Shown here in pieces: positions 11,201 to 56,400 of a DNA stretch of 64,000 nt. A program made the position numbers and the translations under genes. The stretch lies in the NCBI GenBank assembly GCA_965240325.2, contig OZ251253.1, positions 620,001-684,000 on the forward strand. The letters are read 5' to 3'. The notes beneath the pieces are model-generated. The model made no database searches. It was given only the letters and a program-made list of their open reading frames with translations, and was not told where the DNA came from. Numbering within the stretch: the first letter of the stretch is position 1; every line of letters starts with the position of its first letter. Source of the DNA: Rebecca billardiae RCC1528. Its lineage: Eukaryota; Protista; Haptophyta.

Positions 11201-12308
11201 GCGGCAGCGAGGCGGCGGCGCGGCGTGGAGCGCAACCGAGGGCACGGGCGCGTGAGCGGGCGTGGCGCGCGGGCGCGGGCGCGCGCCCCGGCGTCGCCCC
11301 GCCCCCCACTGCCCCCGCCACGCCGCGTGCCCCCGCGCGCCCACCGCACACACGCACGCGGCCGCGCCCTCCGCGCCGGTGGCGCGCCTCCGGCCCCGCC
11401 CCGCGCGGGCCGCCGCCGCGCGCCGCCGCCGCCGCCTGCAAGCCGCGTCGCGCGGCCCAGGGCCGCACGCACACGCCCCGCCCGCACGCGCCCACACCCC
11501 GCCCCCGCGCGCTGCGCGCACCCGCGTCCTGATGCGTCCAGCGCCCGGAGCGCACGTCGATGTGCGCGCCTACAAGACCTAGGCGGGAGCGGCGAGCCCA
11601 GAGCGCGCGCGCGGCGGCGGTGGCGGCGTCGTCGAAGCGGCGGTCGGCGGTGAGGCGCGCGAGCGCGCCAAACTCGAGCGTGAGCGAGCCCGCCGCCGCG
11701 GTGCACGCGATCGGCGACTCGCCCGGCGCGACGCCGTGCCGCAGGTTGACGGTGCCGACAGGGATGGCCGTCGGCGTGTCAAACGCGGGGAGGAGGCGCG
11801 CGCCGAGGTCGTGCGCGAGGGCGAGCAGGTCGCGGCCGCCGCCGGCGGGCGGGTACGTCCCCTCGCGCATCAGCCCGAGCGAGCCGTCGCTCGCCAGCGC
11901 GTGCGCGGACAGCAGCCCGCCGAGCGCGCGGATGGTCGTCTCGAACACCGACACGTTCGCGTCGACGTCAAAGCTGAGCGAGCCGCACGCCCAGAGGACG
12001 GCGGCCTCAAAGTCGTCGGCGGCGCCGACGACGGCGAGCGTGTCCAGCGCGTCGACCAGCGTGAGCGAGAGCCCGCCCCACTGCTCGCCGCCCGAGCCGC
12101 AGCTGAGCGGCGCGAGCGTGTCCGCCGGCCACGCCTCGTGCGCGTACGCGCGGTACGCGTGGAGGAAGAGCGCGCGGGTTTCGTCACGCAGCGCGCGCGC
12201 CTCGGCGCGGCTGACGGGGGTGAGCGGCGCCGGGCGCTCGGTGCCCGCGCCCAGCCCGAGCAGCAGCAGCAGCAGCGCGGCCCCACCGAGCCGCGGCGCG
12301 GGCGCCAT
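8240..12308 (-). CDS. Glycoside hydrolase family 47 (EDEM-like alpha-1,2-mannosidase); exons 12308-11522, 11070-10928, 10656-10575, 10374-10229, 10015-8240
   Basis: Signal peptide; motifs LTLVDALDTL, VSVFETTIRALGGLLSAH, LLPAFDTPT, GSLTLEFGAL, GIDSFVEYLLK, AFWPG, YPLRPELIES, MESFFLAETAKYLYLLF, FTTEGH; four GT-AG introns restore the frame. Confidence 0.93.
10859..10919 (+). repeat. Telomere-like 12-bp tandem repeat (TAGGGTTGGGGG) about 5 copies, in GH47 intron 2
   Basis: ttagggttgggggtagggttgggggtaggg... read directly. Confidence 0.85.
11085..11222 (+). repeat. Degenerate (GCGGCA)n microsatellite in GH47 intron 1
   Basis: Runs of gcggca read directly. Confidence 0.8.
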
Positions 12309-12478
12309 CCTTGCCGCCCGCGCAGCGAGGAGGTCGGCGGCGCCCATCCAAATTCCGGCCGAGTCGCCGATGCCACTGGCCGGCCGCGCGCGCGACAATG
12401 ACTTTCGGCGTGCCACGCGACTCTGAACTCCCAGAAAGCTCCAAAGCCTCGGGCCGTCCATCGCCATTCGCCGGCGGC

Positions 12479-13621
12479 ATGACGACGGCTCGAGCGGCGG
12501 CCCTCCTCGCGTGCGCCGCGGCGGCGTGCGCGCCGGCGCGCGCGATGGTCGCCCCCACCACGCGCCTCGGCTCGGGCGTCCGCGCGCGTATCCCCATCGA
12601 CGAGTCCTTCCCCGGACTGCGCCGCGTGCACGCCGACCCGGACGTGTACGTGATCGAGCGCTTCCTCGAAGCGGCGGACTGCGACGACATGGTCGCGCGC
12701 GCGGCGCCGACGCTGCAGGCGTCGCCCGTGGCGTACGCGGGGTGGACGGAGGACTTCGTCGAGCTGCTCAAGCTCGCCGCCTCCGGCCCGTGCCTCTGGC
12801 TCGCGCTCGTGGGCGCGTGGGCGCAGTCGCAGGGCCACCCCGACTTTTCCCGCGTCGATCTGGTCGTGCACACGGCGCAGAACTACGCGCTGACGCTCGG
12901 CGTGGCGGCGGCGGGGGTGGGCGCGTTCACCAAGTCGCGCGCCTCCGGCCTGCAGACGCTGCGCACCTCCACCTCCACCACGCTCGACGAGCTCGCCACC
13001 GCCGCCGAGCCGCGCGTGTGCGGCACCACCGCTTTTGTGAGAGCCGCCGCGCGCCTGCTGGGCGACGGCGGCGGTGGCGGCGGCGGGGAGGAGCGCGGCG
13101 GGCTCGCGGCGCAGGCGGCGCTCTTCGAGGCGCCCACGATCATCCGGTACGAGCCCGGCCAGGCGCTCGCGCCGCACTACGACGCCAACCGCGCCGCCGC
13201 CACCGAGGACGCAGAGCGCGGCGGGCAGACGCTGGCCACGCTGATCGTCTACCTGAACGACGTGCAGCGCGGCGGCCTCACGCGCTTCGGCAAGCTCAGC
13301 GCACCCGCCGAGGCGGGCGGCGACGGCGCGCAGCCCGCCGCCGCCGACGCGCCGCGCGGCTTTGGCGCCAAGCGGCCGCGCGCCGCCGCGCGCGCCGCCG
13401 CGGGCTCGGCTGACGGCTCGCTCACCGTGACGCCCCGCAAGGGCGACGCCCTGCTCTTCTTCCCGGCGGACGCGGCGGGCGGCTTTGATGAGCGCACGGA
13501 GCACGAGGGCTGCCCCGCCGTCGACGAGAAGTACATCGCGCGCATCTGGCGGCACGCGGGCCGCGTGCGCCCTCCGTACGGCCTCAGTGACGCGCAGCTG
13601 GCCAAGCTGCCGCCCGCCTGA
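12479..13621 (+). CDS. Prolyl-4-hydroxylase-like 2OG-Fe(II) oxygenase with signal/bipartite targeting peptide
   Basis: PDVYVIERFLEAADCD, RTS, IIRYEPGQALAPHYD, ATLIVYLNDVQRGGLTRF, PRKGDALLFF, HEGCPA..EKYIARIW give the HxD..H..K set; N-terminus MTTARAAALLACAAAA. Confidence 0.88.
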   Translation: MTTARAAALLACAAAACAPARAMVAPTTRLGSGVRARIPIDESFPGLRRVHADPDVYVIERFLEAADCDDMVARAAPTLQASPVAYAGWTEDFVELLKLAASGPCLWLALVGAWAQSQGHPDFSRVDLVVHTAQNYALTLGVAAAGVGAFTKSRASGLQTLRTSTSTTLDELATAAEPRVCGTTAFVRAAARLLGDGGGGGGGEERGGLAAQAALFEAPTIIRYEPGQALAPHYDANRAAATEDAERGGQTLATLIVYLNDVQRGGLTRFGKLSAPAEAGGDGAQPAAADAPRGFGAKRPRAAARAAAGSADGSLTVTPRKGDALLFFPADAAGGFDERTEHEGCPAVDEKYIARIWRHAGRVRPPYGLSDAQLAKLPPA

Positions 13622-14054
13622 GCGCGCAGCCGCTGCGGAGGCGCGGCGCCCGCTGCCTCTGCCTGGGGGCGGTCGACCCGTGGGCGGTGTGTGATGGTCG
13701 CCTCCTGCGGTTTTGCTCGCGGCCTTGCTCGGCGCGCCGCCGCCCACTCTGGCAGCGGCTCCGGAGAGCGGAATCCGAGGCGGATGATTGATGCTGTCGT
13801 AGTTTACGGATCAAAGCGACGATATGATGATGTTGGCGGCATGTATTGCATATGCTGTCTAGCAGCCTCGATGTCCTGATGATGAGCCGGGTAGCGCCGC
13901 GTGGCATGTTGCCATCGGGCGCGCCATCGACATCGTTGGCTTCGAGGCTCCACCCCAAGCTGCAGCCGGGCGCTCTCTGTGACTCTGTCTGGCTGCAAGG
14001 CGCGCGAGCTTCCGGATTCGGCCCTCGACCAACATCTACCGCCAGCGATCAAGC

Positions 14055-16055
14055 ATGGCCGACGACGACAGCGCGGAGGCGCCCATCCGCGCGGCGCTGC
14101 GCGCGCGCAAGCTGGACGACGCGTTCGCCGCGTTCCTCGAGCTGCTCGAGTCCGGCGCCACCCCGTCCGCCCGCCTCTGCAACGCGCTCGTCGCCACCTC
14201 CGCCTTCCCCAAGTACGCCGGCGCGGCGCACGCCGCGTTTGCGGCTGCCAAGGGCGCCGCGCACGCGCTCGAGGGCGCGGCGGCGAGCGCGCTCGTGCGC
14301 GCGCACGCGGGCGCGGGGGAGCTGGGGAAGGGGATCGAGGTCGCCGAGTACGCGCCGCGCGGCGCGCTCGCGCAGCCCGCCATCGACGCGCTCGCGCGCG
14401 CCGCGCTGAACGCGGCGCCGCGGCCGCAGCCTCTGCTCGCCGCGCGCGCGCTCGAGCTGTGCGCGCGCGGCGAGGGCGCGGAGGGCGTGCCGCGCGGGCT
14501 CGCGGCCGAGACGATCACCTCGCTCTGCGCCCACGCGCTCGCGCGCTCCAGCCCGCGCGCCGTCGACGACGCCTTCGCCCTCGCCGAGCGGGTGGCGGGC
14601 GCGAGCGCGGCCGACACACCGCCCGGCCCGGCCGCCGCGGCCGGCGGCGGCGGCGGCGGCGAGGTGTCGCCCGAGGCCGCGGCGGCCGCGCTGCCGGCGG
14701 CGCTGCACGCGCAGCTGCTCGCGGCTGCGCTGCGCGTGCGCCAGCCCGCGCGCGCCCTCTGGGCCTACCGGGCGCTGCTGTGCGCGCGCGAGGCGGGCGG
14801 CGGCGGCGGCGCGGCGGGCGGCGACGGCGGCGGCGCGGGCGGCGGCGGCGGCGGCGACGGGCAGGGCGCGGCGGCGGCGGGCGGCGGCGCGGTGAGCGCG
14901 GACACGGCGTCGCGGCTCGCGCTCGCGCTGCACGCCGCCTCGCCGCCGCCGCCGCCGCCGCCCCGCGCCGCCGCCGCCGCCCTGCTCGCCGACGCCGCCG
15001 GCGCTCCGCTCGCGGACGGCGCGGGCGATGCGCTCGTAGCCCTTGCGTGCGGCGCGGGGCTGGCGCGCGAGGCTGCGGCCGTGCTGGTGCGCATGGCGGG
15101 CGTGCGGCTGCGGCCGGCGGACGAGGTGGTCTCCGCGCTGGTCGCGCTCGCCGCGCAGGGCACCGCCGCCGCGCCCGCCGCCGACGGCACTGACGGCGGC
15201 GGCGGCGGCGGCGCGGCAGACGTGGCGCCCGCCGCGCGCCGCGCCGCGCTGCGCGCCGCGCTGCGCGCCTTCAAGGCGCTGAGCGCGGCGCACCCGAAGC
15301 TGCGCCCGCCCGCTGCGCTGTGGCTGCCGCTCGTCGGCGCGTGCGCGCACGCCGCGCGCGAGCTCGACCGCGAGGGCGCGATGGATGACGATGACGCCGA
15401 CGCCGGCGCGGACGCGGACGCCGACGCGGGCGGCGCGGGCGGCGCGGGCGGCGCGGGCGGCGCGGGCGGCGAGGGCGGCGGCGGCGGTGCGTGGGGCGGG
15501 TTCGAGCACCCGGCGGACGGCGGCTTCGCCGTGCACGCGCACGCGCACGCCGAGCGCCCCGGGCAGCACGCCCCGCCGCGCGCGCGCGCCGCGCTCGCGC
15601 GCGCGCTGCTCCGCGCAGGCGGGCGTGCGCGGCACGGCCTGGAGGTGCGCGCATCGCTGCCGGCCGCGCCGGTTGGCTCCGAGCTGGCGGCGGAGCTGGC
15701 GGTGGAGTTGGCGGAGGGCGCGCGGGGCGGCGGCGGGGGAGGGGCGGGGCGGGTCCCCGCGGCGGGGGCGGCGGGGGCGGCACCACCCGCCGCGGACGGC
15801 GGCGGCGGCGCGGACGCGGGCGCGGACGCGGGCGCGGACGCGGGCGCGGACGCGGACGCGCGCTTCGCGGCGCAGCTCGCGGCGGCGGAGGCGGCGGAGG
15901 CGGGCGGCGGGCGGCGCGCGCGCGTGGGGCAGCGCGCGGCCGCGCGGCGCGCGACCGAGGCGCTGAGCGCGCAGGCGGCCGCCGAGTCTGGCGCCGGCGG
16001 TGGCGCGGGCGGCGGCGCGGCGGCGGCGGCGGCCGACAGCGCGGCGGCGGCGGCG

Positions 16056-16112
<57 letters not shown>

Positions 16113-35502: not shown

Positions 35503-36474
35503 TCATGCAGTCGGAGCACACATGAGGCGCACGCCCGTCTGCTCCTCGGCAGCTCTGACGTCGTCGAGAAAGCGCTGCAGCGCTACCGCGTACAGCCGGC
35601 TGTCCACTCGGGTGATCTGATCGACGACCCTCCACGTGCCCGCCGGAACGTCGCGCTCGTGCCGCTCCGGGAGGCCGTGCCGGATGCGATGGAGACGACC
35701 CTCAGGCTCAGCGGCGCTTTCTCGCGCGGCAGCAGGCGCAGTGCTGTTCGCGCGGCTGGCGCAGTCGCACCCGGCAGGGAGGCTCCCCGTCATCCGCAGG
35801 ACGACGAGGCACACCGTCTCGAAGTAGTGCTCTGTGACGCCGACGATCGGCACCTCGTGCAGCCCCGCCAGCACGTGAGGCCAGCTCGGCACGCAGTCGT
35901 CAGGCCCGAAGCAGCGGTGCGCGCGCGGGAAGCAATCGTACCCGCGAGGGCGGTGGCGCACCTTCAAGAACTGGCATTGCCGTCCCGCGGGGTCGACGTG
36001 GTCGAGCCCGCGGCACGTGAGGTAGCGCGACTGCATGTTGAGCGGGTTGTAGCACGCAAAGTCCTCGACCGCGCGGCGCTGCTGCAAGGCCAGGCGTCGC
36101 GTGTGGTTGGCAAAGTGCTCCACCCAGCGCGCAAAGCCCAGCGCGTCGTCCTCGGCCCGATCGAACGCCGGGTGCGAGTGCGCGTCGCGCTTGCCGCTGT
36201 GAAAGTACTTGCAGTGCATGAACTGCGACAGCACGTGCGCCCGCGGCCGCCGCACCACGACGACGAGCCTCGCATCGGGACTGGCGTCGCGCAGCGACGG
36301 TGCGCAGTGCTCGAGGCTCTGCGCGACGGGCAGCGAGTGCGTCTCCAGCAGGTCGTGCTTGAGCGACGTGCCCGCCGTCTTCGGGACGTGCACAAGCACG
36401 AGCTGCTCCCGGAGCGCGCATGCCGGCCCGAGGAGCAGGCAGAGCGCCGTCGCCGCGACGCTGCGGGTCGCCAT
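35503..36474 (-). CDS. Sulfotransferase-family (Golgi type) protein
   Basis: VHVPKTAGTS, VVVRRPRAHVLSQFMH, NMQSRYL, VGVTEHY..TVCL, D.RLY..A..RF; signal peptide. Confidence 0.82.
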   Translation of the reverse strand: MATRSVAATALCLLLGPACALREQLVLVHVPKTAGTSLKHDLLETHSLPVAQSLEHCAPSLRDASPDARLVVVVRRPRAHVLSQFMHCKYFHSGKRDAHSHPAFDRAEDDALGFARWVEHFANHTRRLALQQRRAVEDFACYNPLNMQSRYLTCRGLDHVDPAGRQCQFLKVRHRPRGYDCFPRAHRCFGPDDCVPSWPHVLAGLHEVPIVGVTEHYFETVCLVVLRMTGSLPAGCDCASRANSTAPAAARESAAEPEGRLHRIRHGLPERHERDVPAGTWRVVDQITRVDSRLYAVALQRFLDDVRAAEEQTGVRLMCAPTA

Positions 36475-36539
36475 GGAAAGAACGCGGAAAGTCGGCACCG
36501 AAAATATCCTCACGAAATGCATGGCTCTGGTGGGTCCGG

Positions 36540-38072
36540 ATGCAACATTCGTCCGTCCGAAATCCAGGCGCGACAAAGCCCGACAAAGGCCGACGAAATC
36601 ACGAAAATCACCGCGGAACTCAAACGACGGGCCGGAAGATTGAGCCGACGAATTCCCCGCCGTCCAGCCGCCTCCCAAGCTCGCTCATCGTCATCATCCG
36701 CGGCATCGCGCTCGCCTGGCTCGTCGCATCGGCGCCCACGCCGCTCTCCGCATCGGCCCGTCTCGCTGACGTGCGCGTGGAGCACCTCGCCGGCTCGCGC
36801 GCGGTGGAGCTCTTCCTCGGCGCGCTGAGCGCTCACGCGGCCTTCTTCCTCCTGGTGGCGTGGATGCCTGTCCACCTCCCGTCCAAGCCCTTCCTGCTGC
36901 GCAAGCTCGAGGCGCTCGGCCGCGCCGTGCACGCGCGCACAGTGCTTCTCGTCGGCGTCGCCCTCGGCTTCGCGCTCGCCGCGACGGAGGGCCTCCGCGA
37001 CGCGCCCGACGCGCAGCGGCAGCGCGCGCACGGCCTGTTTGCCCTGCTGCAGCTGGCCGTGCTGCTCGGCGTGCGCACGGCGGAGCGCGCGAGGGCGGAC
37101 GCGCTCATCGCGCTCGAGCGGCAGATGCAAGAGGCCTCGATGCTCGCGTGGTCCCCGCCCGTCTCCCGCCGCCCCGGCGTCGTCGCGCCGCACTTCCTCC
37201 GCGCGGCCTTTGCGCCCAAGTTTCTGAGCGCCGAGCGGCTGCCGACGCAGCGCACGCGCAAGCTGCTCTTCGTGATGAACCACCAGCTCGGCGGGCTCGA
37301 GATCCCGCTATTCGTCGAGTACATGCACGTGGAGCACGGGCTCTTCCCGCGCTCGCTCGCCGACCACGCCCACTTCTACCTGCCCGGCTGGGCGCAGCTG
37401 CTCAGCGCCGCGGGCGCGGTCGACGGCACGCGCGACAACTGCGCGGCGGTGATGCGGCTGGGCCAGCCGCTCCTCGTCTTCCCCGGTGGCGGGAACGAGA
37501 TCCTCAAGAGCAAGGCCGACCGCAAGTACGCGCTCAAGTGGCGCGAGCGCGTCGGCTTCGCGCGCATGGCGATGGCGCACGGGTACACGCTCGTGCCCGT
37601 CGCAGCGGCGGGGCTGGAGGACCAGCTGCACGTGCTCGCCGATATCCCGGTCGGACGCTGGCTGGGCGCGCTCGGGCTGGCATCGGGCGCGCGCGCGGAG
37701 CTCACGCTACCGCTGCTCGCGCCCGTGCCGGCCGAGCTCGGGCAGCGGCTCTACTTCAAGTTCCTCGAGCCCATCGACACGGCGGGGCTCGACGCGACCG
37801 ACCCGGCCGCCGTGCGCGGTGTGCGCGACCTTTGCCAGAGCCGGCTCGAGGCGGGGCTGGCCGAGCTGCTGCGCGAGCGCGAGGCGGACCCCGAGCGCTT
37901 TGTGCGCGGCGGCGGCGGCGGCGGCGCGGAGTGCGCCAGCGCGGGCCCGCGGGCGGCCGCGTGGTGGGGCCGCGCGCGCGGCGACTCTGGCTCCTCCTCC
38001 TCGTCGGCTTCCACGCCCACGCCACCCCCAGAGCGCGCCTCGCCACATGCAGGCAATGAGCGCACTGAATAA
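36540..38072 (+). CDS. Membrane-bound PlsC/DAGAT-type acyltransferase (TMEM68/phytyl-ester-synthase-like); start uncertain
   Basis: N-terminal TM helices; LLFVMNHQLGGLE, PRSLADHAHF, LLVFPGGGNE, YALKWRERVGFARMA..GYTLVPVAAAG. Confidence 0.83.
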   Translation: MQHSSVRNPGATKPDKGRRNHENHRGTQTTGRKIEPTNSPPSSRLPSSLIVIIRGIALAWLVASAPTPLSASARLADVRVEHLAGSRAVELFLGALSAHAAFFLLVAWMPVHLPSKPFLLRKLEALGRAVHARTVLLVGVALGFALAATEGLRDAPDAQRQRAHGLFALLQLAVLLGVRTAERARADALIALERQMQEASMLAWSPPVSRRPGVVAPHFLRAAFAPKFLSAERLPTQRTRKLLFVMNHQLGGLEIPLFVEYMHVEHGLFPRSLADHAHFYLPGWAQLLSAAGAVDGTRDNCAAVMRLGQPLLVFPGGGNEILKSKADRKYALKWRERVGFARMAMAHGYTLVPVAAAGLEDQLHVLADIPVGRWLGALGLASGARAELTLPLLAPVPAELGQRLYFKFLEPIDTAGLDATDPAAVRGVRDLCQSRLEAGLAELLREREADPERFVRGGGGGGAECASAGPRAAAWWGRARGDSGSSSSSASTPTPPPERASPHAGNERTE

Positions 38073-38529
38073 TAAGCGGCGGGGCTAAGTGAGCAACGTC
38101 GTGGACGTCGTCAACGCGCTGCTCGGCTGATGCGCGCGCGTTCGCGCTCGCGTCATCAGAATACGTCGCCCTCGTCGTCATCATCAGCGCGACCCGAGTC
38201 CCGATCGGCATCCGCCACCTCGCGGCGCTGCCAACATCAGCTATATATCATAACTTATCACTATCACGACTATCAGCAGGCAGCAATAAGCAGTTAGTTG
38301 ACGATCGTATCGAGTCATGATGACGCGATAGATAGATAGCAATATCTATATATATATATAATTAGAAAAAACTTATTATATAATATATATTATATATATA
38401 TATTAATATATATTAACGACGTGGCAGCATCCGACAAGCGTCAGGCTCAGAGTGCAACAGACACATAGAATGCGTCACCGCGCCTTCCGTCCAGGTCAGA
38501 CAGTGCGCCACCCGCAGCCCTGCCCCCCT

Positions 38530-40095: not shown

Positions 40096-43000
40096 TCACG
40101 CCGCCGGCTGCTGCTGCTGCTGCTGCTGCTCCGCCGGCGTTGTGGTGATGTACGCGACCTCGCCCTTGGAGCCCCACGGGGCGCCGCAGCGGTAGCGGAT
40201 GTTGCCCTGCCGGTACGCGTGCAGCTCGCCCGAGTCGCACTGCTTGATGAAGGAGCACGGGGGGCCGATCAGCCGCGCGAGCACCTCCGCCGTCGCGCCC
40301 TTGGCGGACGGGCGCACAGACCACTCGTGCTTGGACGCGGCGCGCACGCCCGTGAGCTTGATCGCGGCGCCGCCGCCGTGCTCGCCCGTCACCAGCCTGG
40401 CCAGGTGCTCCGCCGCGCGCGCGGGCGCGTCCTCGTACACGTGGTGCGACGCGCCGCGCACGCTCACGACGGCAAGCTCCTCGCCGTCGAACTCGTCCAG
40501 CCAGCCGCGCATCTCGGCGGCGGTGACGACGCGGTCGTCCGCGCCGCGCAGAATCACCGCGTTGCAGTGCAGCGGCTCCGTCTCCGCGCCGTCGGGGCGG
40601 ACGAACGCCTCGTACAGCGCGAGGTCGGCGCGCAGCGGCGCGAGCAGCTCAGCCAGCCCCGCGCCGCCGGCCGCCAGCCGCTCCGCCGGCACGCCGGACG
40701 AGCGGAGGAACTCGGCGAGCTGCTCGTCTGTCAGCGCGGAGCACGGCGTGTGCGGCGCATATGAGCCGAGCCCGCCGGTGTGGCCCTCCGCGATCGCGGG
40801 CGCCGCGTTGCCCGACGCGACGAACGCCGAGGGCTCGAAGCCGGTCGCCTTGCGCAGCGCGTGCGCGGTCGCGTACGCAGCGAGCGCGCCCCACGAGTCG
40901 CCCACGAACACACACGGGCCGCGCGGCGCGGTCTCGGCCGTGAGCAGCGGCTGGAGCTCGGCGGTGAGCGCGCCGATGTACGCGTCGAGCGACGACTCGG
41001 ACGGCTCGGCCGCGCGCTCGTCGCGGCCGGGCGGGCTGACGAAGAGGAAGCGCGCGCGCGGCTCGAGCTCCCTGAGCCGGAGGTACGTGTGCGCAAACTG
41101 CTTGGGCGAGCCTGCGGGCGGGCGGCCGACGCGGCACGGCGCGGGCGCGCGCGAGGGTCGCGGGGGAGAGCGCGGCTGAGCGCGGCGGCCGGTGCGCGCG
41201 CGCGCGCACACGCGCACAGCACGCACGCACGCGCACACGCGCACAGCGCACACGCGCGCAGCCCGCACGCGCAGCCCGCGCGCACCGCCGGCCATCGGGA
41301 AGAGCACGAAGGTGGGCAGCTGCGGCCGCTCCGCGTCCGAGACCGCGCGGAACACGCCTTCGTACGGCTGAGAGACGGTCACCCAGCGCGGGGCGTCGGC
41401 GGCGCCGCCCTTGGCCACGCCCGCCGACGCGGCGACGTCGTCGATGAAGCTGCCGAGCGTCTTGGTGAGCAGCGCGAACACGGGCGCCTTGAGGCCGAGC
41501 GTGTCGCGCAGCGCGGCCACGCACTCCATCGCGGAGAAGGAGTTGCCTCCTGCACGCGCACGCGCGCACGCGCGCGCGGTGAGGGGGGAGGGCAGCGGGG
41601 ACGGCGCGCGCGCGCGAGCGAGGGCGTGAGCGCCGGGCGGCGAGGCGCGCGGCGGCGCACGGCGCGGCGCACGGCACACCGCGCACCGCGGCGCGGGACG
41701 CGACGGCTCGGCTCGGCTCGGCCGCGCCGCGCGCGCACGCGCGCGCGCACCCGCGTCGGCAAACGAGCCGCTCTCTGCGAGCGCGGTGCCGCCGATCACG
41801 GCCTGGAGCACCGCGACCACGGCGTCGCGCTTGGCGCCCTCGGCCCACAGGGCGCGCGCCTCCTTGAGCCCGGTGGCCTTGCCTGCGCGGCGCGGCGCGG
41901 CGGCGTGCCGGGCGTGGGCGCGGCGGGCGGGCGGCGGGGCGCGCGCGCGCGCGAGTGAGCCGCGGCGGCCGCGGCGCGCGGCGCGCGCGGGGCGCGGCGC
42001 GCGTGGGGCGCGGCGGCGCGCGGCGGCGGCGCGGCGCGCGCGGGGCGCGGCGGCGGCGCGCACCGTCGTTGGTCTTGGTCTCGGCCTCGACGGCGAACGC
42101 GGCGCGGTTGGAGAAGCTCTCCAGGTCGAGCGCCGGCGCGCTGAGCAGCGCCTGCTCCGCCTCGCCCGCCATCGCGGCGCGCATCACCGCGCGCAGCCCG
42201 CCAATCATGTGCGCGCGCGGCAGCAGGTAGCAGTCAAGCTCGTCGAGCGCGTTGGCGCGCGACCAGGTGAGCACGGCGTGGTGGTCGGGGAGCGCGGCGG
42301 CGAGCGCGTCGCGCAGGTCGGCCGGGTCGATCCCGCCGCCCTCGCCCACGCCGTCCTGCACCGCCGGCGCCGCCGCGTCCGCCGCGCCGCTCACGAGCAG
42401 CACGTCCGCGGTGAGGCGCGCGTTGCGCACGCCAAAGCGCGCGACCACCGCAGGCGGCGCGCCCGCGCGCTCGGCCGCCGCCACCTCGTCGCGCAGCGCG
42501 GCGGCGATCGAGCCGGCGGTCTCGCCCTCGGCGGCGGCGGGCGGCGCCACCTCGCGCAGCGGCAGCGCCGCCTCCGCCGGCCCCGTGTGCAGCAGCACGT
42601 TGTACCGGTATCGCCCGAACTCCGTCATCAGCCGGTCGCGCTTGAGCTGCACCTCGACAGCGCTCACGCCCGGCAGCTCGCCGCGCAGCGCGAGCGCGTA
42701 GAAGAGCGCGGGGTCGAAGCAGCGGTCCTTGTCCTTGGCGAGCTCGGCGTCCTGGAACGCCCGGTCCACGCACTGCTCGTACGACGCGTACAGGTGGCGC
42801 GCGCGCCGCACGCAGAAGAGCCGCTGGTGCGCGAGCGAGCGCACGTCCCCGAAGTGAAAGCAGCCGCCGGGCGCGAGCTTGGGCAGCCCGTTCTTGAGCA
42901 CCTTGGCCGTGTACTCGACGGAGGGGAAGTACATCGAGACGCCGTTGCACACGATCGAGGACCACTCGCCGTCGTCGAAGCCGGAGAAGTTCGCCGCGTC

Positions 43001-43635
43001 GCGCACGTGCATCTTGAGCTTGCCGTGCCCCGCCGGGCCGAGCGCCGCGCGCCCAAAGTGCGAGCGCCAGGTGCGCTCCACGTACTCGACGGCGAGCCTC
43101 GCGATGTCGGTGCCGACCGCGCGCACGACGCGCGGCGAGGCGGCCCACTTGAAGAGGATCATGCCCTTGCCGCAGCCCATCTCGATCACCGCGTCGGGCT
43201 TGCGCTCCAGGATCTCGTCCGCCGTGTGCTGCACCCACTCCGCGATCGTGCGCCGCTCGTGCATCTTGCCGGTGAAGGAGTCGTAGTAAGACGCCCAGTC
43301 CATTGTCGGGTCCTCCTGCCCGTCCGAGACCTGCAGGTCCTCCGAGAAGTACATCTCGTTGTACACGGCGCCCCAGCGCGCGGCCTTGCGCTGGTCGTCG
43401 ATGTACGCCGCCACCGCGCGGTGGTCCACCTTCCCCGCGTTGTTGAGCGGCATCGCCTCGATGAAGAACCACTCGGCCGGGATGTACGCGGCGGGCAGCC
43501 GGCGCGCGAGCAGCACGGACAGCTCGCCCGCGGACGGCGTGGGGCGGCCGGGCGTGGTGGACGCGACGCCGACGAGCTGGCCGTCGACCTTCTCGACGGC
43601 GGCGGCGGAGAGCGCGGGCGCCACCTCGAGCACCA

Positions 43636-43671
<36 letters not shown>

Positions 43672-45199
43672 CCACCTTCACCTGCCGGTCGGCGCGGCCG
43701 TTGTACTCGATGATGCCGCTCGCGCCGTCGCGGATGCCGAGGTCGCCCGTGCGGTACATGAGGCCGGGCGCGCCGTGCGGGTTGCGGAGGAACTTCTCGG
43801 CGGTGAGCGCGTGGCGGCCGAGGTACCCGTACGCCACCTGCACGCCGCCGATGCAGATCTCGCCCTTCTCGCCGTCCGGCACCAGCGCTGTCGGGTCGGA
43901 CGGGTCGGTGATGTAGATGTGCACGCCCGGCATCGCGCCGCCGATCGCAAAGCCGTGCGCGGCCGCCGGCGCGCCGTCCGCGCTCGGCTCGGGGTCCTTG
44001 GCGTCGAAGCAGGTGACGACGATGCTCGCCTCCGTCGGGCCGTACATGTTGAGCAGCTGCACGCGCGAGCCGATCGCGCCGCTCAGCTTGGCGCGGTGCG
44101 TGCTGAGCAGCGCCTCACCGATCGTGATCACCTGCCGCAGCGCCGGGCACGCGCCCGGCCGCACCGAGTCGAGGAAGAGCGCGAGGAGCGAGGGGACGAA
44201 GTGGCAGCTGGTGACGCCGCCGCGCTCCATCGTCTCGGCGGTCTCGTCGAAGTCGAGCTGCGCGCCGTCGCGCAGCACCACCGAGCGCGCGCCCAGCAGC
44301 AGCGGCTGCCACATCTCGTGGATCGAGACGTCAAACGTGCACGTCGTCTTGAGGAGGAACACGTCGTCGCGCGTGGCCGCCTGCTGCTCGATGGCCCAGA
44401 GGAGCTCGTTGTGCACGCCCGCGGAGGGGACGATGCAGCCCTTGGGCTTGCCCGTCGAGCCCGACGTGAACATCACGTACATCGCCTCCGGCGCGCGCCA
44501 CGGCAGCGGCGGCGGCGGCGGCGGCGGCGCGCCGCCGCCGACGCCGCCGACGTCGCGCGAGCCAACCTTCGGGATCTTCGCGGCCTTGAAGAGCGCGGCG
44601 CGCGCGGCGGAGCGGTGCTGCTCGAAGGCGAGCGCGTCGGCGCGCGGCGCGCCGACGCGCACGACCTCCGCCGTCTCGCTCAGCTCGACGAGCACCACCT
44701 CGTCCGTGTCGAACTCGGCCGGCGTCGCGTCCGCGCCGTCGTCGCACACGAGCGCGCACACGCGCGTCTGCTCGAGGATGTCGGCGATGCGCGGCTCGGG
44801 CCAGCTTGGGTCGATGGGGACGAAGGTCATCCCCGCCTTGAACGCGGCGAGCTCCGAGATCGGCAGCGCCGCCGTCCGCCGCAGGAGCAGGCCGACGGTG
44901 CACGGCTCGTCGTCGGCCGCGTCCGCGCCAAACGCCTGCACGCACGCCGCGCGCAGCACGGCGGCGATCTCGGCGGCGCGCTCGTGCGCGGTCTTGTACG
45001 TGAGCGTGCGCTCGGTGTGCTCGTCCGGGTACCACGCGAACGCCACGCCGTCGGGGTGCACGCCCGGGCCCGGCGCGGCGCTCATGCCGATCGCGTCGCC
45101 AAAACGGTCCGCCGCCGCGCGCTTCCACTCGGCCGGCACGGCGTGGGGCGACCACTCGTTGTCAACGCGGTCATTCGCGGTCGAGGTCGGCGCCGGCAT
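40096..45199 (-). CDS. Mono-modular NRPS-like enzyme A - N-methyltransferase - PCP - thioesterase (about 1515 aa); exons 45199-42064, 41882-41751, 41549-41286, 41111-40096
   Basis: A cores YVMFTSGSTGKPKG, FDVS, NMYGPTE, GEICIGG.QVAYGY, YRTGDLG, GRADRQVKVGGVRIELGEVE, PLNNAGKVD. MT: W..VYNEMY..WASYYDSFTG..EW..VIEMGCGKGMILF..NGVSMYFPS..FGDVRS..RYRYNVLLH. PCP: FADAGGNSF. TE: LFPMAGGS, PPGRDER, VGDSWGA, LRADL, GADD, GASHH. Exons total 4548 nt. Confidence 0.92.
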
Positions 45200-47465
45200 C
45201 GCGACGGATGTACGGGGGCGGTCGAGGTGCGAGGAGGCGGGCGGGGGCGACGAGCGGCGAGTCCTTGCTCGGCGCGCGGATGAAGTCGAGGCGGCGATCG
45301 GTTGCCGGAGCCAGGTAGGTCGGTCGAGCGCAGCACGTGGTGAGCTTCGCGCCTCAGCGGCGGACGCTGGGCGAAAAGGGTCGCGCCGAGAAACACATCC
45401 CCCGCGGATGGCGTCACGGGCGATCACGGGCAGATGAGCCTACTCGCCGCTGACGACACTGGGTTCACCTCGCGAACCCACAGAAGGCCAGCGAAGGTGG
45501 CATCTCACATATGAGTGTGCAGATCCGATAGCTGAGAAGCCCGCGGATGGCTCGGCTGACAAACCACCATCTAACATACAGAAGCTTCGGTCCGTCCGCC
45601 GCCGCCTCCTCCGAAAAGCGAAATTGGCCAATCCCCGCCCAGGAAGGCGTTGACGTGGTGAGCCGAAACAAAAATCCGCCAATGAATTCGGGCGCCGGGA
45701 TTTGGGAAGTGTGGAACTGGCGGGAAAAAACAAATTCGCGTCATCAAGAGTTTCGACCCCCGTACGTTTGCCGGTTCAACTGGCGAGATATTGATCTGAC
45801 CTCTTTGGGCTTGTGGTGATGAAATCGAGATCGGAGATAGCGACCAGAGACTGAATCTGGAGATCATGACTCATGAACAAGTTTCATGAAGTAGCACCGG
45901 TACGTCGTACGCACGGCTGGGCTGCTACCCACCGCATGGAGAACCCATAAGTCGTCCGCGTTGCTGCCCCACCGTACAGGGGGGTCCAGATGGTGGCGGG
46001 TACTTCGATGGTGGCTGGCCAGGTAGTGCGGCACGTCCGTGCCTCTGGACGGGCATTGAGCCGTGGCGAGGTCGCCAAATCGCGCGGCGTGGTCCCAGAG
46101 AAGGCTGCTGCTATCACTGACCAGCTTGCTAGCCATGCCGGTCGTTGATCACCCCGCCGTTGACAGGCGCGCACACGCCACGCGTAATCGCATGGCAGCC
46201 GTGTCGGACGGCGGTCGCACGACTACCGCGTAGCCAACATTGATCGTCAGACTCACGACTTGTGGGGTCAGGCAGAACATTGATAGGTCTGCACCCTCGC
46301 CTGGCATGCCCCAGAGGTCAACACAGCCATCAGAAGGGTGATCCTGCCCACTACTTGCCCATCCTTCCCATGCGCAGTCTCGCGCGCGCCGGTCACACGA
46401 TGACGTGGACGTGGACGTGAGAGTGGTCGAAAAGTCGGAAGGGAAGCTGTCACTCACGCACGCGCGCTCGTACGGCGACGCCGACCGGCGAGTGCAACGC
46501 CCCCCTGTCCCGGACGTTGCACTCGCGCCTTGGATCGCGGTGGGACGGCCATTCACGCCCGCCATGGCTTCCCTTCAAAACTCCCCAACTTCATCTGGAC
46601 CCCCCTGTAACCAAATTTGCATGCACTTGTCCGGCCGGTCCGGGGCAATCAAGGTCCGCGGCCGCGGATGCGCGCGCACCCGAACGCCGCGAGCAGTGCA
46701 AGACCCGCCACGGCGCGCCAACGACGACCAGCAGCCCGACTGGCGTCGGCAGCTCGCACATGCACTGAGCCCTTCCGGCTCCGCCGTGCGTCGGCGGCGT
46801 GCGCGCTGCACGCGGACGCGACCACCCTTGCGGACGTGGAGTCGGGTTGTGGGCTGCAGCACTCCGAGCACGGCGACGCGCCCTGCCGGAACGGAGGCAG
46901 GCGAAGCGGGGCAGCTGCGGCAAGGGTGGTGCGCCACGTGGCCACGGCCGTCATGAATGTCGTGCGTGGGTCACGCGTAGCTGCACCGAGTGCTGAGCGC
47001 ACTCCACAAGGCGCGCGCGTCACAGCGCGAGCGTCACTGTTAGCGAGCGCGCACTCCACCAGCACCGGCCCAGCAGTACGCAGCGGCCAAGCTACCGTCG
47101 CCCTCCGCGCGCGATGCCATTGCGTGCGCCGCGGCCCGCGCCCGCCTCTCACTGCGCGTTGGGCTAGTGGCTCCGAGAAGCGGACTGGAGTCGGAAGGGT
47201 TGCTCCGCTGCGCATAGAATATAGATTGCGCCGTCTGATCGCGGGCACGGCGCGCAAGCTTTGTATCGATACCGTACCACTACGACGGCCTGAGCCACGG
47301 TGTGTTCTCGCAGCCTGCCTAAGCTGTGTGCGTCTCTTATTCTAAATTCTTAGTAAACCATCGTAGTAGTCAAACGTGCGTGCGCCTCATCAGTAACGCC
47401 TAAATACGTCTGTACGGTGGAGTATGCTGACAGTATGCCTGCGCGGTGCCGTCATCGTCAGTCTG

Positions 47466-53497: not shown

Positions 53498-56400
53498 TCA
53501 GTGCTGCGGCTGGTTGCTCTGGCTCACGGTCGGTGCGTCGGCTGCCACGCCTACGTGGCTCGTCGCCGCGCCGCCGCCGCCCGCCGCGCCCGCCGCCCTC
53601 GGCGGCGCGGGCGGCGCGCCGGCGTCGAGCTCGGCCGTCGTCCCGTCGCCGCCCGGCTCGCCGCCGCCCGGCCGGCCGCCGCCGCCGCCGCCGGTCCCCG
53701 CGGCCGCGGCGCCGGCGCCGGCCGCCGTCGGCGCGGCGCGGCTGCCCGCGCCGCCACTCGCGGCCCCGCCGGGCGCGTGCGGCGGCTGGCCGCCGCCGCC
53801 AGCGCCGCCGCCCGGCTCGTCGCCGTCGCCGTCGGCCGCGGCGGCGGGCGCGTCCGCCACGCTGCCGTGCTCCGCGCGGCGGCGCGCGTTGCGCCCGGCG
53901 TTCTTGCCCTGGTTGCGCGCGCGCTTGGCGGCGCGCGCGTCGAGCACCGCCGCCTCCGCCTCGCCCTCGCACGCGCCCTCGGGCTCGTCGCCCGCCGGCC
54001 GCTTCTGCGCGGCGGTGTGCGCCGTCTTGCGCGTGCCGGGGCCCCAGTCGGGCGCCGGGTTCTGCGGGAAGCGAGTCACGCCCTCTGCGCCGCCCGCCTT
54101 GCCAATGGCGCGCGCGGCGGCGGCGGACGCGCGGAGCTGCGCGTCGAGGCGCGGAGGCCTGGCGAGGATCGCGGTGGCGGGCGAGGTGGGCGAGCCGCCC
54201 TTCACCGGGTTCTGCCGCACCCAGCAGCGCAGCACGTCCCAAATCGCCTCGAACGGCGCGTCTGTCTTGAGGCCGGTGTGGGACGCGTGTGTGCGTGACA
54301 CGCGGTGGCCCGCCTCGAGCAGCGCCGTCACGAAGTGCGCGAGCGGCGGCGTCTGGCAGTGGAGCACGCCGCACAGCGCGGAGAGGTCCACGTACAGCGG
54401 CGCGTCGGGCAGCTCCTCCGACACCGTCGTGAGCAGCCCGAGCAGCTTGTGCTGCGCGGCATACGCATGCGCGCCCACAGGCTGCCCCGCGCGGCCGCGC
54501 CCCTCGCCCGCGCGCAGCTCGGCGAGCGCGGCCGCGACGGCGGTCGGCTCGTGCAGCGGGCCTGCCCAGAGCGGCCCGCCGATGTGGTGCCCGCGGCCGC
54601 AGTGCGCGCACGCGCGGTCGAGCGGCGGCGGCGCGCCGGGCACGAACTTGGGCGCGCGCCCCGCGCCGCGCTCCACGCTGCGGCCGAGGGGCGCTAGGGA
54701 GAACGCCTCGCAGCCGTGGCACTGGTACAGGTAGGCGCGCTTGGCGGCGGCGCGCTTCACCTCGGCGGCGGAGGTGAAGACGCGCACGAACACGCGCACG
54801 TAAAAGTCGATGGAGACGGCGAGCTGCGGCACGATGTACCGCTTGTACCGCGCCGCGTGCGAGTCGATGGAGGCCAGCAGGATGCGCAGCGCCATCTCGT
54901 GGCAGTGCTTGCCCCGCAGCGGGTAACTGCGCGTGCGGCGTGCGCGCGGCGGGGCGCGGCGGGGCGGCGGCGTGAGCGGCGGCGTGCGTGGCGGCGTGAG
55001 CGGCGGACCGCGCGGCGGAATACGCGCGCGCGGCGTCCAGCCCGCCCCCGCCCCCCTTCCACGCACCTGCCGTACTTGGCGAAGCACGCCTCGCCGTGGT
55101 TGCCGCTGAGCACCGCCATGTCTGTGCAGGTCACGGCCAGCAGCCCGCCCTCCGCCACCGCCTGGACCGCGCCGTCGAGGAAGGGCGCGGCGGTGCCGTA
55201 CGGGTCGAGGTCGATCAGGTGGAAGCGCCGGTGCGTCGGCAGCCGGTGCCGGTACAGCAGCTCCGCCGCGTCGCCGAGCGCGGGCTGCACGCGCGCGGCC
55301 ACACCCGGCCCATTGCGCTGCGCGTTGGAGCCGATCGCCGCGACGGCAGCGGCGGAGATGTCGTTGGCGAGAATGTACTCCGCGCCGGGCACCTCGTGCG
55401 CGTAGCGCAGCGCGCGCAGGCCTGCGCGCGCGCGCGCGAGCGGCGGGCGCGCGCGAGGGCGGGCGGGCGCACCCGCGCCTCAGCCCGCGCGCGCCGCCGG
55501 GCCAGCACTCGCGCCGGAGAGTGGCGCGGCGCGCAGCCGCGGCCGCGCGCCGCGCCGCGCGCGCGCGCCGCACCCGAGGCGGACAGGGCGTCGAGGATGC
55601 GGAGGCCCTGCGGCGGGGCGGCGTGGTGGTGGTGGTGCTGCGCCGCGGCGGCAGTCGCGCCGCCGCCGTCCACGCCGCCGCCGTCCGCGCCGCCGCCCGC
55701 GCCCGCCGTCGGCGCCGCCGCCGCGTCCGCGCCACCGCCGCCCGCTGCCGCCGTCGCTGTCGCGCCCGCGTCCGCAGCCGCGCCACCGCCACCGCTGCCG
55801 CCGCTCCCGCCCACGCCGTAGCTCGACACGACGTCAGCAGCGCGCTCGGCCGCGTGGTGCTGCGCGCCGGGGGGCGGCCCGCCCGTCTCCCCGTGCGCAT
55901 CGCCGTCCGCGTCCGCCGCGGCGGGCGCGCCCGCGCCGCCGCCGCGCCTGCGCGCGGCTGCGCGCCGCGGGGGGAGCGCGCGCGCGCGCGTGCGTGTGAG
56001 CCCCCACGCTGCTGCCGCGCTGCTGCCGCGCTGGTGCGGTGCGCCGAGTGCGCCGAGTGCCGAGTGCCGAGCGCAGAGCGCCGAGCGCCGCGTGCTGGGT
56101 GCCGCGTGCTGGGTGCATGCATTGAGATGTGCAGCCTCGCGCGCTCGGGCCCATCAGCCCCAGCAGCTCTCTCTCTCTCTAGCGCGCGCAGTGGCTCGGC
56201 GCGGACCGCTCCCCCCTCGCGCCCCCGCGGCCCCAGCCACTCCCCCCCGGCCAACCCGCGCGCACGCCCCCGCCGCGGCGTGCCGCGCCCCGCTGTGGCG
56301 GCGCCGCCCCGCCGCCGCACCTTTGGCCGCCGCCTCTTCGGCAAACTGCTTGGCAAACACCTTGGCCATGATCATCGAGAGGTCGCGGTTGGTGCACTGG

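What the first reader, a model, noticed from the sequence alone, without database searches (positions are those of the whole stretch)
40096..45199. Stand-alone eukaryotic NRPS-like enzyme A-MT-PCP-TE: candidate tethered N-methyl-amino-acid/betaine synthetase
Seen in sequence: after removing 3 introns (one splits the PCP G|GNS motif, so the ORF track hides it), one 1515-aa protein contains a complete adenylation domain, an NRPS-type SAM N-methyltransferase, a carrier domain with its Ser and a thioesterase, but no condensation domain. Established: A activates an amino acid, PCP tethers it, nMT methylates the alpha-amine and TE releases it; without C no standard chain elongation occurs. Inference: the product is a mono- to tri-N-methylated amino acid (betaine-type osmolyte) or a TE-made dimer or ester. 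Marine algae accumulate such compounds, often by unassigned routes. Host-style introns show it is a resident nuclear gene.
Basis: partly seen in the sequence, partly recalled or inferred. Interest (0 to 1): 0.9.

Follow-up and report, generated by a model that had tools for sequence, protein, structure and literature searches.

The report
Algal one-module A-MT-carrier-thioesterase enzyme
This is a real four-exon algal gene for a single-module, condensation-free NRPS-like enzyme that probably loads a small amino acid on its own carrier, methylates it and hydrolyses it off; the family occurs in several groups of marine algae and I found no study of it, so the product (an N-methyl amino acid or betaine) is still a guess.

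Summary
On the minus strand, four exons (45199-42064, 41882-41751, 41549-41286, 41111-40096) joined across three GT-AG, phase-1 introns give a 1515-aa protein. Its order is adenylation domain, NRPS-type methyltransferase, carrier domain (GGNS serine), then a thioesterase. No condensation domain occurs anywhere in the 64-kb window.

All catalytic motifs are invariant in 15-19 homologues. These homologues have the same architecture and come from Emiliania huxleyi, Hemiselmis, Bathycoccus and marine metagenomes or metatranscriptomes.

- The thioesterase is type-II-like by sequence and fold, which suggests hydrolysis.
- The methyltransferase follows an uninterrupted A domain, whereas its nearest relatives sit between motifs A8 and A9.
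- The specificity code here (DVHSIIMIVK) is crowded and non-polar, which suggests a glycine- or alanine-sized substrate. Other clades carry a polar, serine-like code.
- A conserved C-terminal extension of about 95 aa has no known relative.

The betaine or osmolyte product remains untested. No RNA run was available, no characterised orthologue was found, and the only solved homologue of the methyltransferase does both N- and S-methylation. The verdict is a new variant of a known kind and a good biochemical target. The scan also noted this stretch before (s1-363444).

The parts
42064..45199 (-). Exon 1 (ATG at 45199; residues 1-1045 plus the first base of codon 1046). Encodes the A domain and the MT domain.
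   Evidence: GC1/2/3 is 0.72/0.50/0.98. The N-terminus aligns with that of P0001.
41883..42063 (-). Intron 1: 181 nt, GT..AG, phase 1, GC 0.96.
   Evidence: Removing it is needed to join the two reading frames.
41751..41882 (-). Exon 2 (132 nt): the N-terminal half of the carrier domain, up to FADAG.
41550..41750 (-). Intron 2: 201 nt, GT..AG, phase 1. It splits the first Gly codon of GGNS. It is in frame and stop-free, so it is hidden in ORF tracks.
41286..41549 (-). Exon 3 (264 nt): GNS(F) with the phosphopantetheine serine Ser1093 (codon 41541-41539), the rest of the carrier domain, a linker, and the first TE strand (FVLFPMAG).
41112..41285 (-). Intron 3: 174 nt, GT..AG, phase 1, in frame and stop-free. 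It splits the AGG|SPKQ motif of the TE.
40096..41111 (-). Exon 4: the TE core, the C-terminal extension, a poly-Gln tail and the stop codon TGA at 40098-40096.
43406..45058 (-). Adenylation domain (residues about 48-598). Motifs A3 FTSGSTGKPKG, A5 NMYGPTE, A7 YRTGD, A8 GRADRQVKVGGVRIELGEVE, A9 LPAAYIP and A10 AGKVDH are all present and uninterrupted. The specificity code is DVHSIIMIVK.
   Evidence: Pfam AMP-binding 3.8e-64. TIGR01733 2.9e-92. Alignment to the second A domain of LgrA. Code derivation. Invariant columns.
42110..43402 (-). NRPS-type SAM methyltransferase domain (residues about 600-1030), placed after A10. SAM motif I is VIEMGCGKG. CNGVSMYFPS and EFGRYRYNV are conserved. The C-terminal beta-rich subdomain is modelled at pLDDT of about 90.
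   Evidence: Match to TioS 5WMM at 8e-21 with alignment. Fold match at 5e-54. AF2 model with pLDDT 81. Motif order and blastp.
41443..41882 (-). Carrier (PCP/T) domain, residues about 1047-1125, interrupted by intron 2.
   Evidence: Colinear with, and 43% identical to, the P0001 carrier region, which scores PF00550 at E 9.4e-9. The GGNSF motif is conserved in 17 of the 18 homologues aligned.
40384..41325 (-). Thioesterase domain (residues about 1165-1420), interrupted by intron 3. The triad is Ser1250 (GDSWG, codon 40896-40894), Asp1370 and His1400.
   Evidence: PF00975 2.3e-9. The triad columns are invariant in 15 sequences. The best sequence and fold matches are type II thioesterases BorB, RifR, RedJ, ClbQ and YbtT. 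The model core has pLDDT above 85.
40099..40383 (-). Conserved C-terminal extension (residues 1421-1515) with the motif LGPPCxF[IV]..D...L..[FY]R.GN..YR.G...GS[KR]GE, followed by a lineage-specific poly-Gln tail.
   Evidence: Conserved in P0001-4, P0006-9, P0012, P0013 and P0121, and absent in the Hemiselmis and Bathycoccus clades. No Pfam hit, no atlas neighbour, pLDDT below 50.

Best explanation
The gene encodes an active, cytosolic, single-module NRPS-like enzyme that works on one tethered substrate and does not build a peptide.

Shown from sequence: an intact, uninterrupted amino-acid adenylation domain with the alpha-amine-binding Asp and the A10 Lys; an NRPS-lineage SAM methyltransferase; a carrier domain with its serine; and a thioesterase with a Ser-Asp-His triad that is type-II-like in sequence and fold. 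There is no condensation domain.

Inferred mechanism:
1. The A domain adenylates a small neutral alpha-amino acid. In this clade the pocket is crowded and non-polar, so the substrate is probably glycine- or alanine-sized.
2. The A domain transfers the amino acid to the phosphopantetheine arm on Ser1093.
3. The MT methylates the aminoacyl thioester, most likely on the alpha-nitrogen, one or more times.
4. The TE hydrolyses the thioester and releases a free N-methylated amino acid.

Whether the end product is a mono-, di- or trimethyl (betaine) compound is not known.
For: - The gene model and domain order are established.
- All catalytic residues are invariant across homologues.
- The A domain is closest to amino-acid A domains for small residues. 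Its best match is the second A domain of LgrA (the Gly module, from my own knowledge) at 291-324 bits. The next matches are an uncharacterised 'Peptide synthetase' chain (8xjz_C), then FscH (solved with Ser-AMP), Txo2 and EntF.
- The code DVHSIIMIVK places Ile, Ile, Met, Ile and Val at the five deep-pocket code positions (PheA 299/301/322/330/331).
- The MT is homologous to the TioS A-MT domain and to MT domains of multimodular NRPSs (the two looked up are fungal and actinobacterial). SAM motif I and the NGV..YFP segment are conserved, and the whole domain of about 430 aa is modelled with confidence.
- The top 16 fold matches of the TE are all free-standing hydrolytic type II thioesterases, which rank above cyclising type I TEs.
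- There is no C domain in the window or in the homologues.
- Homologues occur as MMETSP transcriptome records of E. huxleyi and Hemiselmis, so the family is expressed.
Against: - No RNA evidence exists for this gene.
- The specificity code matches no code I know, so the substrate is a size and polarity guess.
- Other clades of the same family have quite different, polar codes, so a single family function is not assured.
- The one solved MT homologue performs both N- and S-methylation (PMC10510592), so the methylated atom cannot be read from homology.
- Hydrolysis is inferred only from resemblance to type II thioesterases.
- Gene neighbours are not conserved and give no pathway hint.
- The conserved C-terminal extension is unexplained.
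Confidence: 0.5

Rival explanations
1. The enzyme is a loading or supply module. It makes an N-methyl-aminoacyl-S-carrier that is passed in trans to another synthase (a PKS or NRPS) or to an alcohol, amine or lipid acceptor. The TE would act as a transferase or only as an editing hydrolase.
For: Type II thioesterases are typically editing or off-loading enzymes that work alongside other synthases (one search lists RifR, YbtT and ClbQ). The Bathycoccus-like contigs carry a second large AMP-binding/FSH1 gene and an MFS transporter next to the homologue. The conserved C-terminal extension could be a docking element. Other notes of this scan report further NRPS-like and megasynthase genes in this genome (untested).
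Against: No partner gene is conserved next to the family in the three contexts examined. The TE is fused in cis and its triad is invariant. Members of the Hemiselmis and Bathycoccus clades lack the extension.
Confidence: 0.2
2. The MT methylates a side-chain atom (O or S) of the tethered amino acid and not the alpha-nitrogen. Examples would be O-methyl-serine or an S-methyl product.
For: The TioS module-4 MT, the only solved homologue, does both N- and S-methylation (PMC10510592). Most family clades have a Ser-like polar half-code, S/T301-L322-I330-E331.
Against: The window's own clade has a non-polar pocket (I, I, M, I, V) that leaves little room for a side chain carrying a heteroatom. The nearest non-family relatives are the a8-a9-inserted MT domains of multimodular NRPSs, the class that Ansari et al. 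describe as N-MT.
Confidence: 0.13
3. The TE joins two tethered units into a diketopiperazine, a cyclic ester or a dimer, as the TE domains of fungal A-T-TE enzymes do, so the product is a small N-methylated dimer.
For: Condensation-free A-T-TE enzymes that dimerise their substrate are known in fungi (PMC9047271 abstract). O'Neill 2020 compared algal A-T-TE genes with those enzymes (PMC7073580).
Against: The TE resembles hydrolytic type II thioesterases more than product-forming type I TEs. The A domain keeps the alpha-amine-binding Asp and is not of the keto-acid type.
Confidence: 0.08
4. The locus is not expressed, or it is a decaying copy, and the intact reading frame is coincidental.
For: No RNA run could be found. 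No identical protein is in the 5.8-billion-protein collection; the best hit is 57% identical.
Against: The spliced frame is open for 1515 codons with GC3 of 0.98 in every exon. All catalytic residues are intact. The splice sites are precise GT-AG.
Confidence: 0.03

Closest known systems
TioS module 4 interrupted adenylation domain (A4a-M4-A4b, PDB 5WMM), thiocoraline NRPS
   Same: It is the only solved structure homologous to the MT (E 8e-21) and the best fold match of the whole A-MT exon (5e-54). Both have a Rossmann SAM fold plus a beta-rich C-terminal extension, and both act on a carrier-bound aminoacyl thioester.
   Different: In TioS the MT is inserted between motifs A8 and A9 of a C-A-T elongation module. 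Here it follows A10 in a C-less, stand-alone enzyme. TioS M4 does N- and S-methylation of Cys. The substrate here is different and unknown.
N-methyltransferase domains of multimodular fungal and bacterial NRPSs (for example the 7290-aa Stachybotrys protein P0202 and the Saccharothrix protein P0205)
   Same: These are the nearest MT relatives outside the family by profile search (E 1e-106 to 1e-88). They share motif I and the ..YRY.. motif.
   Different: They lie in C-A(MT)-T modules of peptide assembly lines with the order A8-MT-A9-A10. This family has the order A8-A9-A10-MT-T-TE and makes no peptide.
Fungal non-reducing NRPS-like A-T-TE enzymes (quinone and furanone synthetases), and the algal 'Other(A)' class of O'Neill 2020
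   Same: They are single-module, condensation-free A-T-TE enzymes. O'Neill noted that such genes are widespread in algae (PMC7073580).
   Different: Those enzymes activate aromatic alpha-keto acids and their TE dimerises the substrate (PMC9047271). This enzyme keeps the amino-acid Asp, carries an MT domain and has a type-II-like TE.
NRPS-like A-T-R-R enzymes: fungal ATRR glycine betaine reductase, and diatom PtNRPS1
   Same: They are stand-alone eukaryotic NRPS-like enzymes that process one small nitrogenous metabolite on a carrier. ATRR links NRPS-like chemistry to betaine metabolism (cited in PMC9321204). PtNRPS1 is an algal precedent (PMC13194791).
   Different: They release by reduction with two R domains and have no MT or TE.
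Bacterial single-module A(MT)-T and A(MT)-T-R proteins (P0178, and Calothrix P0182 and P0187)
   Same: They are C-less enzymes with an A domain, an NRPS-type MT and a carrier domain, and they are the closest bacterial proteins of similar length.
   Different: Their MT is interrupted-type, between A8 and A9. They have no TE, or a reductase in its place. MT identity is only about 30%. No closer bacterial or viral relative was found.
Type II thioesterases (RifR, RedJ, ClbQ, YbtT, BorB)
   Same: They are the best sequence and fold matches of the TE domain. They share the alpha/beta-hydrolase fold and the Ser-Asp-His triad.
   Different: Those proteins are free-standing. Here the domain is fused in cis after the carrier, has GDSWG where those have GHSMG (from my own knowledge), and carries an extra conserved tail of about 95 aa.

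Membership tests
NRPS amino-acid adenylation domain (ANL superfamily) | Core motifs A3-A10 are present and in order. | tested here: met
   Pfam AMP-binding 3.8e-64. TIGR01733 309.6 bits against a cut-off of 317.4, so just under it. Alignment to LgrA through A10. Invariant columns.
NRPS amino-acid adenylation domain (ANL superfamily) | Asp235 (alpha-amine) and Lys517 (carboxylate) equivalents are present. | tested here: met
   FDVS Asp290 and AGKVDH Lys590 are conserved in all 19 sequences.
NRPS amino-acid adenylation domain (ANL superfamily) | The specificity code matches a characterised substrate. | tested here: inconclusive
   DVHSIIMIVK matches no code I know. From, the second A domain of LgrA reads DIASLCIIYK at the same positions, with 4 of 10 identical. 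No prediction tool was available.
Interrupted adenylation domain (A-M-A) of NRPSs | The MT is homologous to NRPS N-MT domains. | tested here: met
   5WMM at E 8e-21. 1984 proteins at E<1e-30 with the family MT profile; the listed top hits are mostly multimodular NRPSs. Two of them were identified.
Interrupted adenylation domain (A-M-A) of NRPSs | The MT is inserted inside the A domain, between A8 and A9 (or A2 and A3). | tested here: not met
   The order here is A8-A9-A10-M1-M2-T. Residues 560-608 of the window protein align to the post-MT A9-A10 segment of P0207, P0182 and P0202. Ansari 2008 states that insertion between A8 and A9 is the rule.
Carrier (PCP/T) domain | A phosphopantetheine-attachment serine in a GGxS motif, with a PP-binding profile match. 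| tested here: met
   GGNSF is present after splicing. The spliced sequence could not be handed to Pfam. Homologous segments score PF00550 at E 9e-9 to 1e-4 and are colinear and 37-48% identical.
Thioesterase, type II-like (PF00975) | Alpha/beta-hydrolase fold with a Ser-Asp-His triad. | tested here: met
   PF00975 2.3e-9. S72, D192 and H222 are invariant. The fold matches RifR, RedJ and ClbQ at E about 1e-12.
Canonical NRPS (peptide-forming) | At least one condensation domain. | tested here: not met
   There is no tblastn hit to C domains in the 64-kb window, and no PF00668 in homologues P0001-P0022.
Fungal keto-acid A-T-TE NRPS-like enzymes | The A domain is specific for aryl alpha-keto acids (no alpha-amine Asp) and the TE dimerises. 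| tested here: not met
   The Asp is retained. The TE is nearest to hydrolytic type II enzymes. An extra MT domain is present.
   This needs an enzyme assay or metabolite data. No characterised orthologue was found in the literature searches.

The most novel reading that the evidence does not exclude
This family could be an unrecognised ATP-driven, carrier-tethered route to amino-acid betaines in marine algae. In that reading, one polypeptide loads glycine, alanine or serine-type substrates, methylates them exhaustively while they are tethered, and hydrolyses off the betaine. Clade-specific pockets would give different betaines in haptophytes, cryptophytes and prasinophytes. This would assign genes to osmolytes whose algal synthesis is unassigned.
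Probability: 0.2. Interest if true: 0.85.

Novelty: new variant of a known kind. Interest (0 to 1): 0.6.

Why it matters
Methylated zwitterions such as betaines and related compounds are major carbon, nitrogen and sulfur currencies of the surface ocean, and many of their algal biosynthetic genes are unassigned. Here a conserved and evidently active enzyme family is shared by ecologically important algae (Emiliania, Bathycoccus, Hemiselmis and this GC-rich alga). Its domain logic of activate, tether, methylate and hydrolyse points to a free methylated amino acid.

That gives a direct and cheap biochemical test. It also gives a gene marker that could be followed in ocean metatranscriptomes if the product is identified.

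For NRPS enzymology, the family is a natural example of an N-MT-lineage domain moved out of the A domain to a position after A10. That is of interest for domain engineering.

Tried and rejected
- RNA evidence. Two run searches and one read-laying run gave no usable RNA. The single run held three short contig pieces, one of them a 170-nt exact match.
- Upstream C-domain exon. Rejected: tblastn was negative across the window, GC falls to 0.55 upstream of 45450, and the P0001 homologue starts at the same N-terminus.
- Bacterial or viral origin, or informative bacterial gene clusters. Pattern scans of GTDB genomes and of IMG/VR with the MT alignment found no relative.
- Conserved gene neighbourhood. 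None was found. The window has an acyltransferase, a CS-domain protein and TRM1. One metagenome lineage has an SDR upstream. The Bathycoccus-like contigs have an MFS transporter and another AMP-binding gene.
- C-terminal extension. There was no Pfam hit, no atlas neighbour and no confident fold.
- Literature. Nine searches found no paper on this family; one of them, on PDB code 8XJZ, returned only unrelated papers. The McParland osmolyte-gene survey and the TioS structure paper are not held.
- FscH. I first recalled it as a Gly domain. The PDB title says Ser-AMP, and I corrected this.
- Spliced protein. The full spliced protein could not be passed to Pfam or AlphaFold by reference, so the exons were analysed separately.

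Full report
**Gene model.** The region lies in very GC-rich DNA (0.70-0.84), flanked by GC dips at 38000-38500 and 45500-46000. On the minus strand a long ORF (45427-40649) carries real protein sequence from the first ATG at 45199 down to 42064. A second frame (42063-40096) then carries islands of protein-like sequence separated by Arg/Ala/Pro-rich low-complexity stretches.

Reading the DNA gives three GT..AG introns: 42063-41883, 41750-41550 and 41285-41112, of 181, 201 and 174 nt. All are phase 1 and all begin GTGCGCGC.

Introns 2 and 3 are stop-free multiples of three, so an ORF finder runs through them. All four exons have GC1/GC2/GC3 of about 0.73/0.52/0.98, whereas the introns are flat at 0.83-0.98 in every frame. 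The spliced junctions restore three family motifs in register with 18 homologues:
- junction 1: ..TKTNDG|KATGLKEA..
- junction 2: FADAG|GNSF, the carrier serine motif
- junction 3: FPMAG|GSPKQFA, the first TE motif

RNA confirmation was not possible. No RNA run was listed, and the one run found held only three short pieces.

**Domains.** Exon 1 scores AMP-binding at 3.8e-64 and gives several class-I methyltransferase hits. It reaches TIGR01733, the amino-acid adenylation domain model, at 2.9e-92.

The A domain aligns to the second A domain of LgrA through A9 (LPAAYIP) and A10 (AGKVDH), so it is complete and uninterrupted.

The following ~445 residues (about 430 of them modelled as the domain) have one significant solved homologue, the MT of the TioS interrupted A domain (5WMM, E 8e-21). 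The alignment covers SAM motif I and the NxV..YFP segment. An AlphaFold model of exon 1 (pLDDT 81) shows the MT region, including a beta-rich C-terminal subdomain, at pLDDT of about 85-95. Its best PDB fold match is 5WMM over 1038 columns (5e-54).

The carrier region could not be submitted as a spliced sequence. Homologous segments score PP-binding at E 9e-9 to 1e-4 and are colinear with it.

Exon 4 scores Thioesterase at 2.3e-9. Its GDSWG serine, Asp and His are invariant in 15 sequences.

No condensation domain exists in the window or in any of the 22 same-architecture homologues. The N-terminus of P0001 matches the start at 45199.

**The family.** Proteins with the same A-MT-T-TE architecture, 37-62% identical, come from MMETSP transcriptomes, Tara-type metagenomes and NCBI. 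Named members are Emiliania huxleyi, Hemiselmis tepida and H. andersenii, and Bathycoccus prasinos.

A maximum-likelihood tree gives three well-supported clades: Hemiselmis; Bathycoccus-like; and a clade of 11 that holds the E. huxleyi cluster. In that third clade the window protein groups with P0001 and P0002 (SH-aLRT 99).

Other follow-up notes of this scan call the organism a haptophyte. I did not test that. The tree placement is compatible with it.

No relative of the MT region was found in GTDB bacterial and archaeal genomes or in IMG/VR. The closest bacterial proteins of similar size are only about 30% identical in the MT.

1. *Methyltransferase position.* A profile of the family MT, searched against 1.84 billion representatives, finds 1984 proteins at E<1e-30. 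Right after the family members come MT domains of giant multimodular NRPSs. Examples are a Stachybotrys (fungal) protein and a Saccharothrix protein. In those proteins, and in bacterial A-MT-T(-R) proteins, the motif order is A8-M1-M2-A9-A10-T. In this family it is A8-A9-A10-M1-M2-T. The A9-A10 segment of the window protein aligns to the post-MT segment of the canonical modules. Ansari et al. describe insertion between A8 and A9 as the rule for N-MT domains. The family is therefore a permuted variant with an uninterrupted A domain, which agrees with the scan's separate note s1-363444.

2. *Thioesterase type.* By sequence (BorB, RifR, YbtT, RedJ, human TE2) and by fold (the top 16 matches are all type II thioesterases), the TE resembles free-standing hydrolytic type II enzymes more than cyclising type I TEs. 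This favours simple hydrolysis.

3. *Specificity codes.* I mapped the ten specificity positions through the conserved motifs and the LgrA alignment.
   - The window protein reads DVHSIIMIVK, and its two or three nearest relatives read DVHSVIMVVK.
   - Ile, Ile, Met, Ile and Val at the five deep-pocket code positions (PheA 299/301/322/330/331) leave little room. The second A domain of LgrA, which I take to be the Gly module, reads DIASLCIIYK at the same positions.
   - The other clades read DC[PA]SSTLIEK (the E. huxleyi group), DVGSQSLIEK (Bathycoccus) and DVPSHIFVDK (Hemiselmis). The deep halves of these codes resemble serine codes as I remember them.
   - The best characterised A-domain relatives are the second A domain of LgrA, FscH (solved with Ser-AMP), Txo2 and EntF.
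   - I read this as a family built around small amino acids, with at least two substrate classes. This is an inference, not a prediction from a validated tool.

4. *C-terminal extension.* A tail of about 95 aa with a strongly conserved motif is present in the haptophyte-containing clade only. It has no Pfam hit, no atlas neighbour and no confident fold.

**Mechanism.** The domain logic gives the most likely cycle:
1. Adenylation of a small alpha-amino acid.
2. Thioesterification to Ser1093.
3. SAM-dependent methylation of the tethered aminoacyl group.
4. Hydrolysis by the TE, releasing a free methylated amino acid.

The parts and their catalytic residues are shown from sequence. The substrate, the atom methylated, the number of methyl groups and the mode of release are inferred.

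The review PMC10510592 states that the TioS module-4 MT performs both N- and S-methylation, so the regiochemistry is not settled by homology.

Gene neighbourhoods give no help. The window has an acyltransferase/DAGAT-like gene (36363-38069), a CS-domain gene and TRM1. Other lineages have different neighbours.

**Literature.** Nine searches found no characterised member of this family, although one of them (a PDB code) returned nothing relevant. O'Neill 2020 noted that algal genomes carry a surprisingly wide distribution of A-T-TE 'Other(A)' genes, and likened them to fungal benzoquinone synthetases. That paper does not mention a methyltransferase. The diatom PtNRPS1 (A-T-R1-R2) paper states that the functions of algal NRPS-like enzymes are largely uninvestigated.

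**Verdict.** I class the finding as a new variant of a known kind. It is a conserved, uncharacterised algal NRPS-like family with an unusual domain order, and it offers a clear and inexpensive biochemical test.

Noticed in passing
window 40099-40383 (-): A conserved tail of about 95 aa follows the thioesterase (motif LGPPCxF[IV]..D...L..[FY]R.GN..YR.G...GS[KR]GE). It is shared by the haptophyte-containing clade only. It has no known family and no confident fold, and here it ends in a poly-Gln run.
   Followed up: partly
window 41550-41750 and 41112-41285 (-): Introns 2 and 3 are stop-free multiples of three (201 and 174 nt). Intron retention would therefore keep the frame and insert 67 or 58 Arg/Ala/Pro-rich residues into the carrier motif or the first TE motif. 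ORF-based annotation will mis-call this gene.
   Followed up: partly
P0003 (MMETSP transcript), residues 1-270: The closest named-source homologue begins with an acetyl-CoA-synthetase-like N-terminus (PF16177) that merges into the family at the shared TSGSTGKPKG motif. This is probably a chimeric transcript assembly and not a real fusion.
   Followed up: no
L003-L005 (Bathycoccus-like marine contigs), genes around 10001-14131: The homologue sits beside an MFS_1 transporter (14621-16102) and, about 9 kb upstream, a 1557-aa protein with FSH1 serine-hydrolase and AMP-binding domains. This could be a small metabolic neighbourhood in prasinophytes.
   Followed up: no
L001 and L002 (marine metagenome contigs): In this lineage the first ~160 aa of the A domain are called as a separate gene just upstream of the 1357-aa ORF. 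The likely cause is an intron. A short-chain dehydrogenase gene lies divergently upstream in all three contigs.
   Followed up: no
window 36363-38069 (+): The neighbouring gene is an acyltransferase/DAGAT-like protein (PF01553 1.8e-8, PF03982 1e-6), convergent with the NRPS-like gene. A DAGAT gene also lies about 7 kb from the homologue in L002. This is probably coincidence.
   Followed up: no
window 53498-56356 (-): An ORF with a TRM1-type N2,N2-dimethylguanosine tRNA methyltransferase domain (PF02005 4e-54) carries a long N-terminal extension of about 470 aa.
   Followed up: no
P0182 and P0187 (Calothrix), P0178 and P0179: These bacterial C-less single-module proteins have the architecture A(MT)-T-R or A(MT)-T. 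They are the nearest bacterial analogues and are annotated only as generic 'amino acid adenylation domain' proteins.
   Followed up: partly
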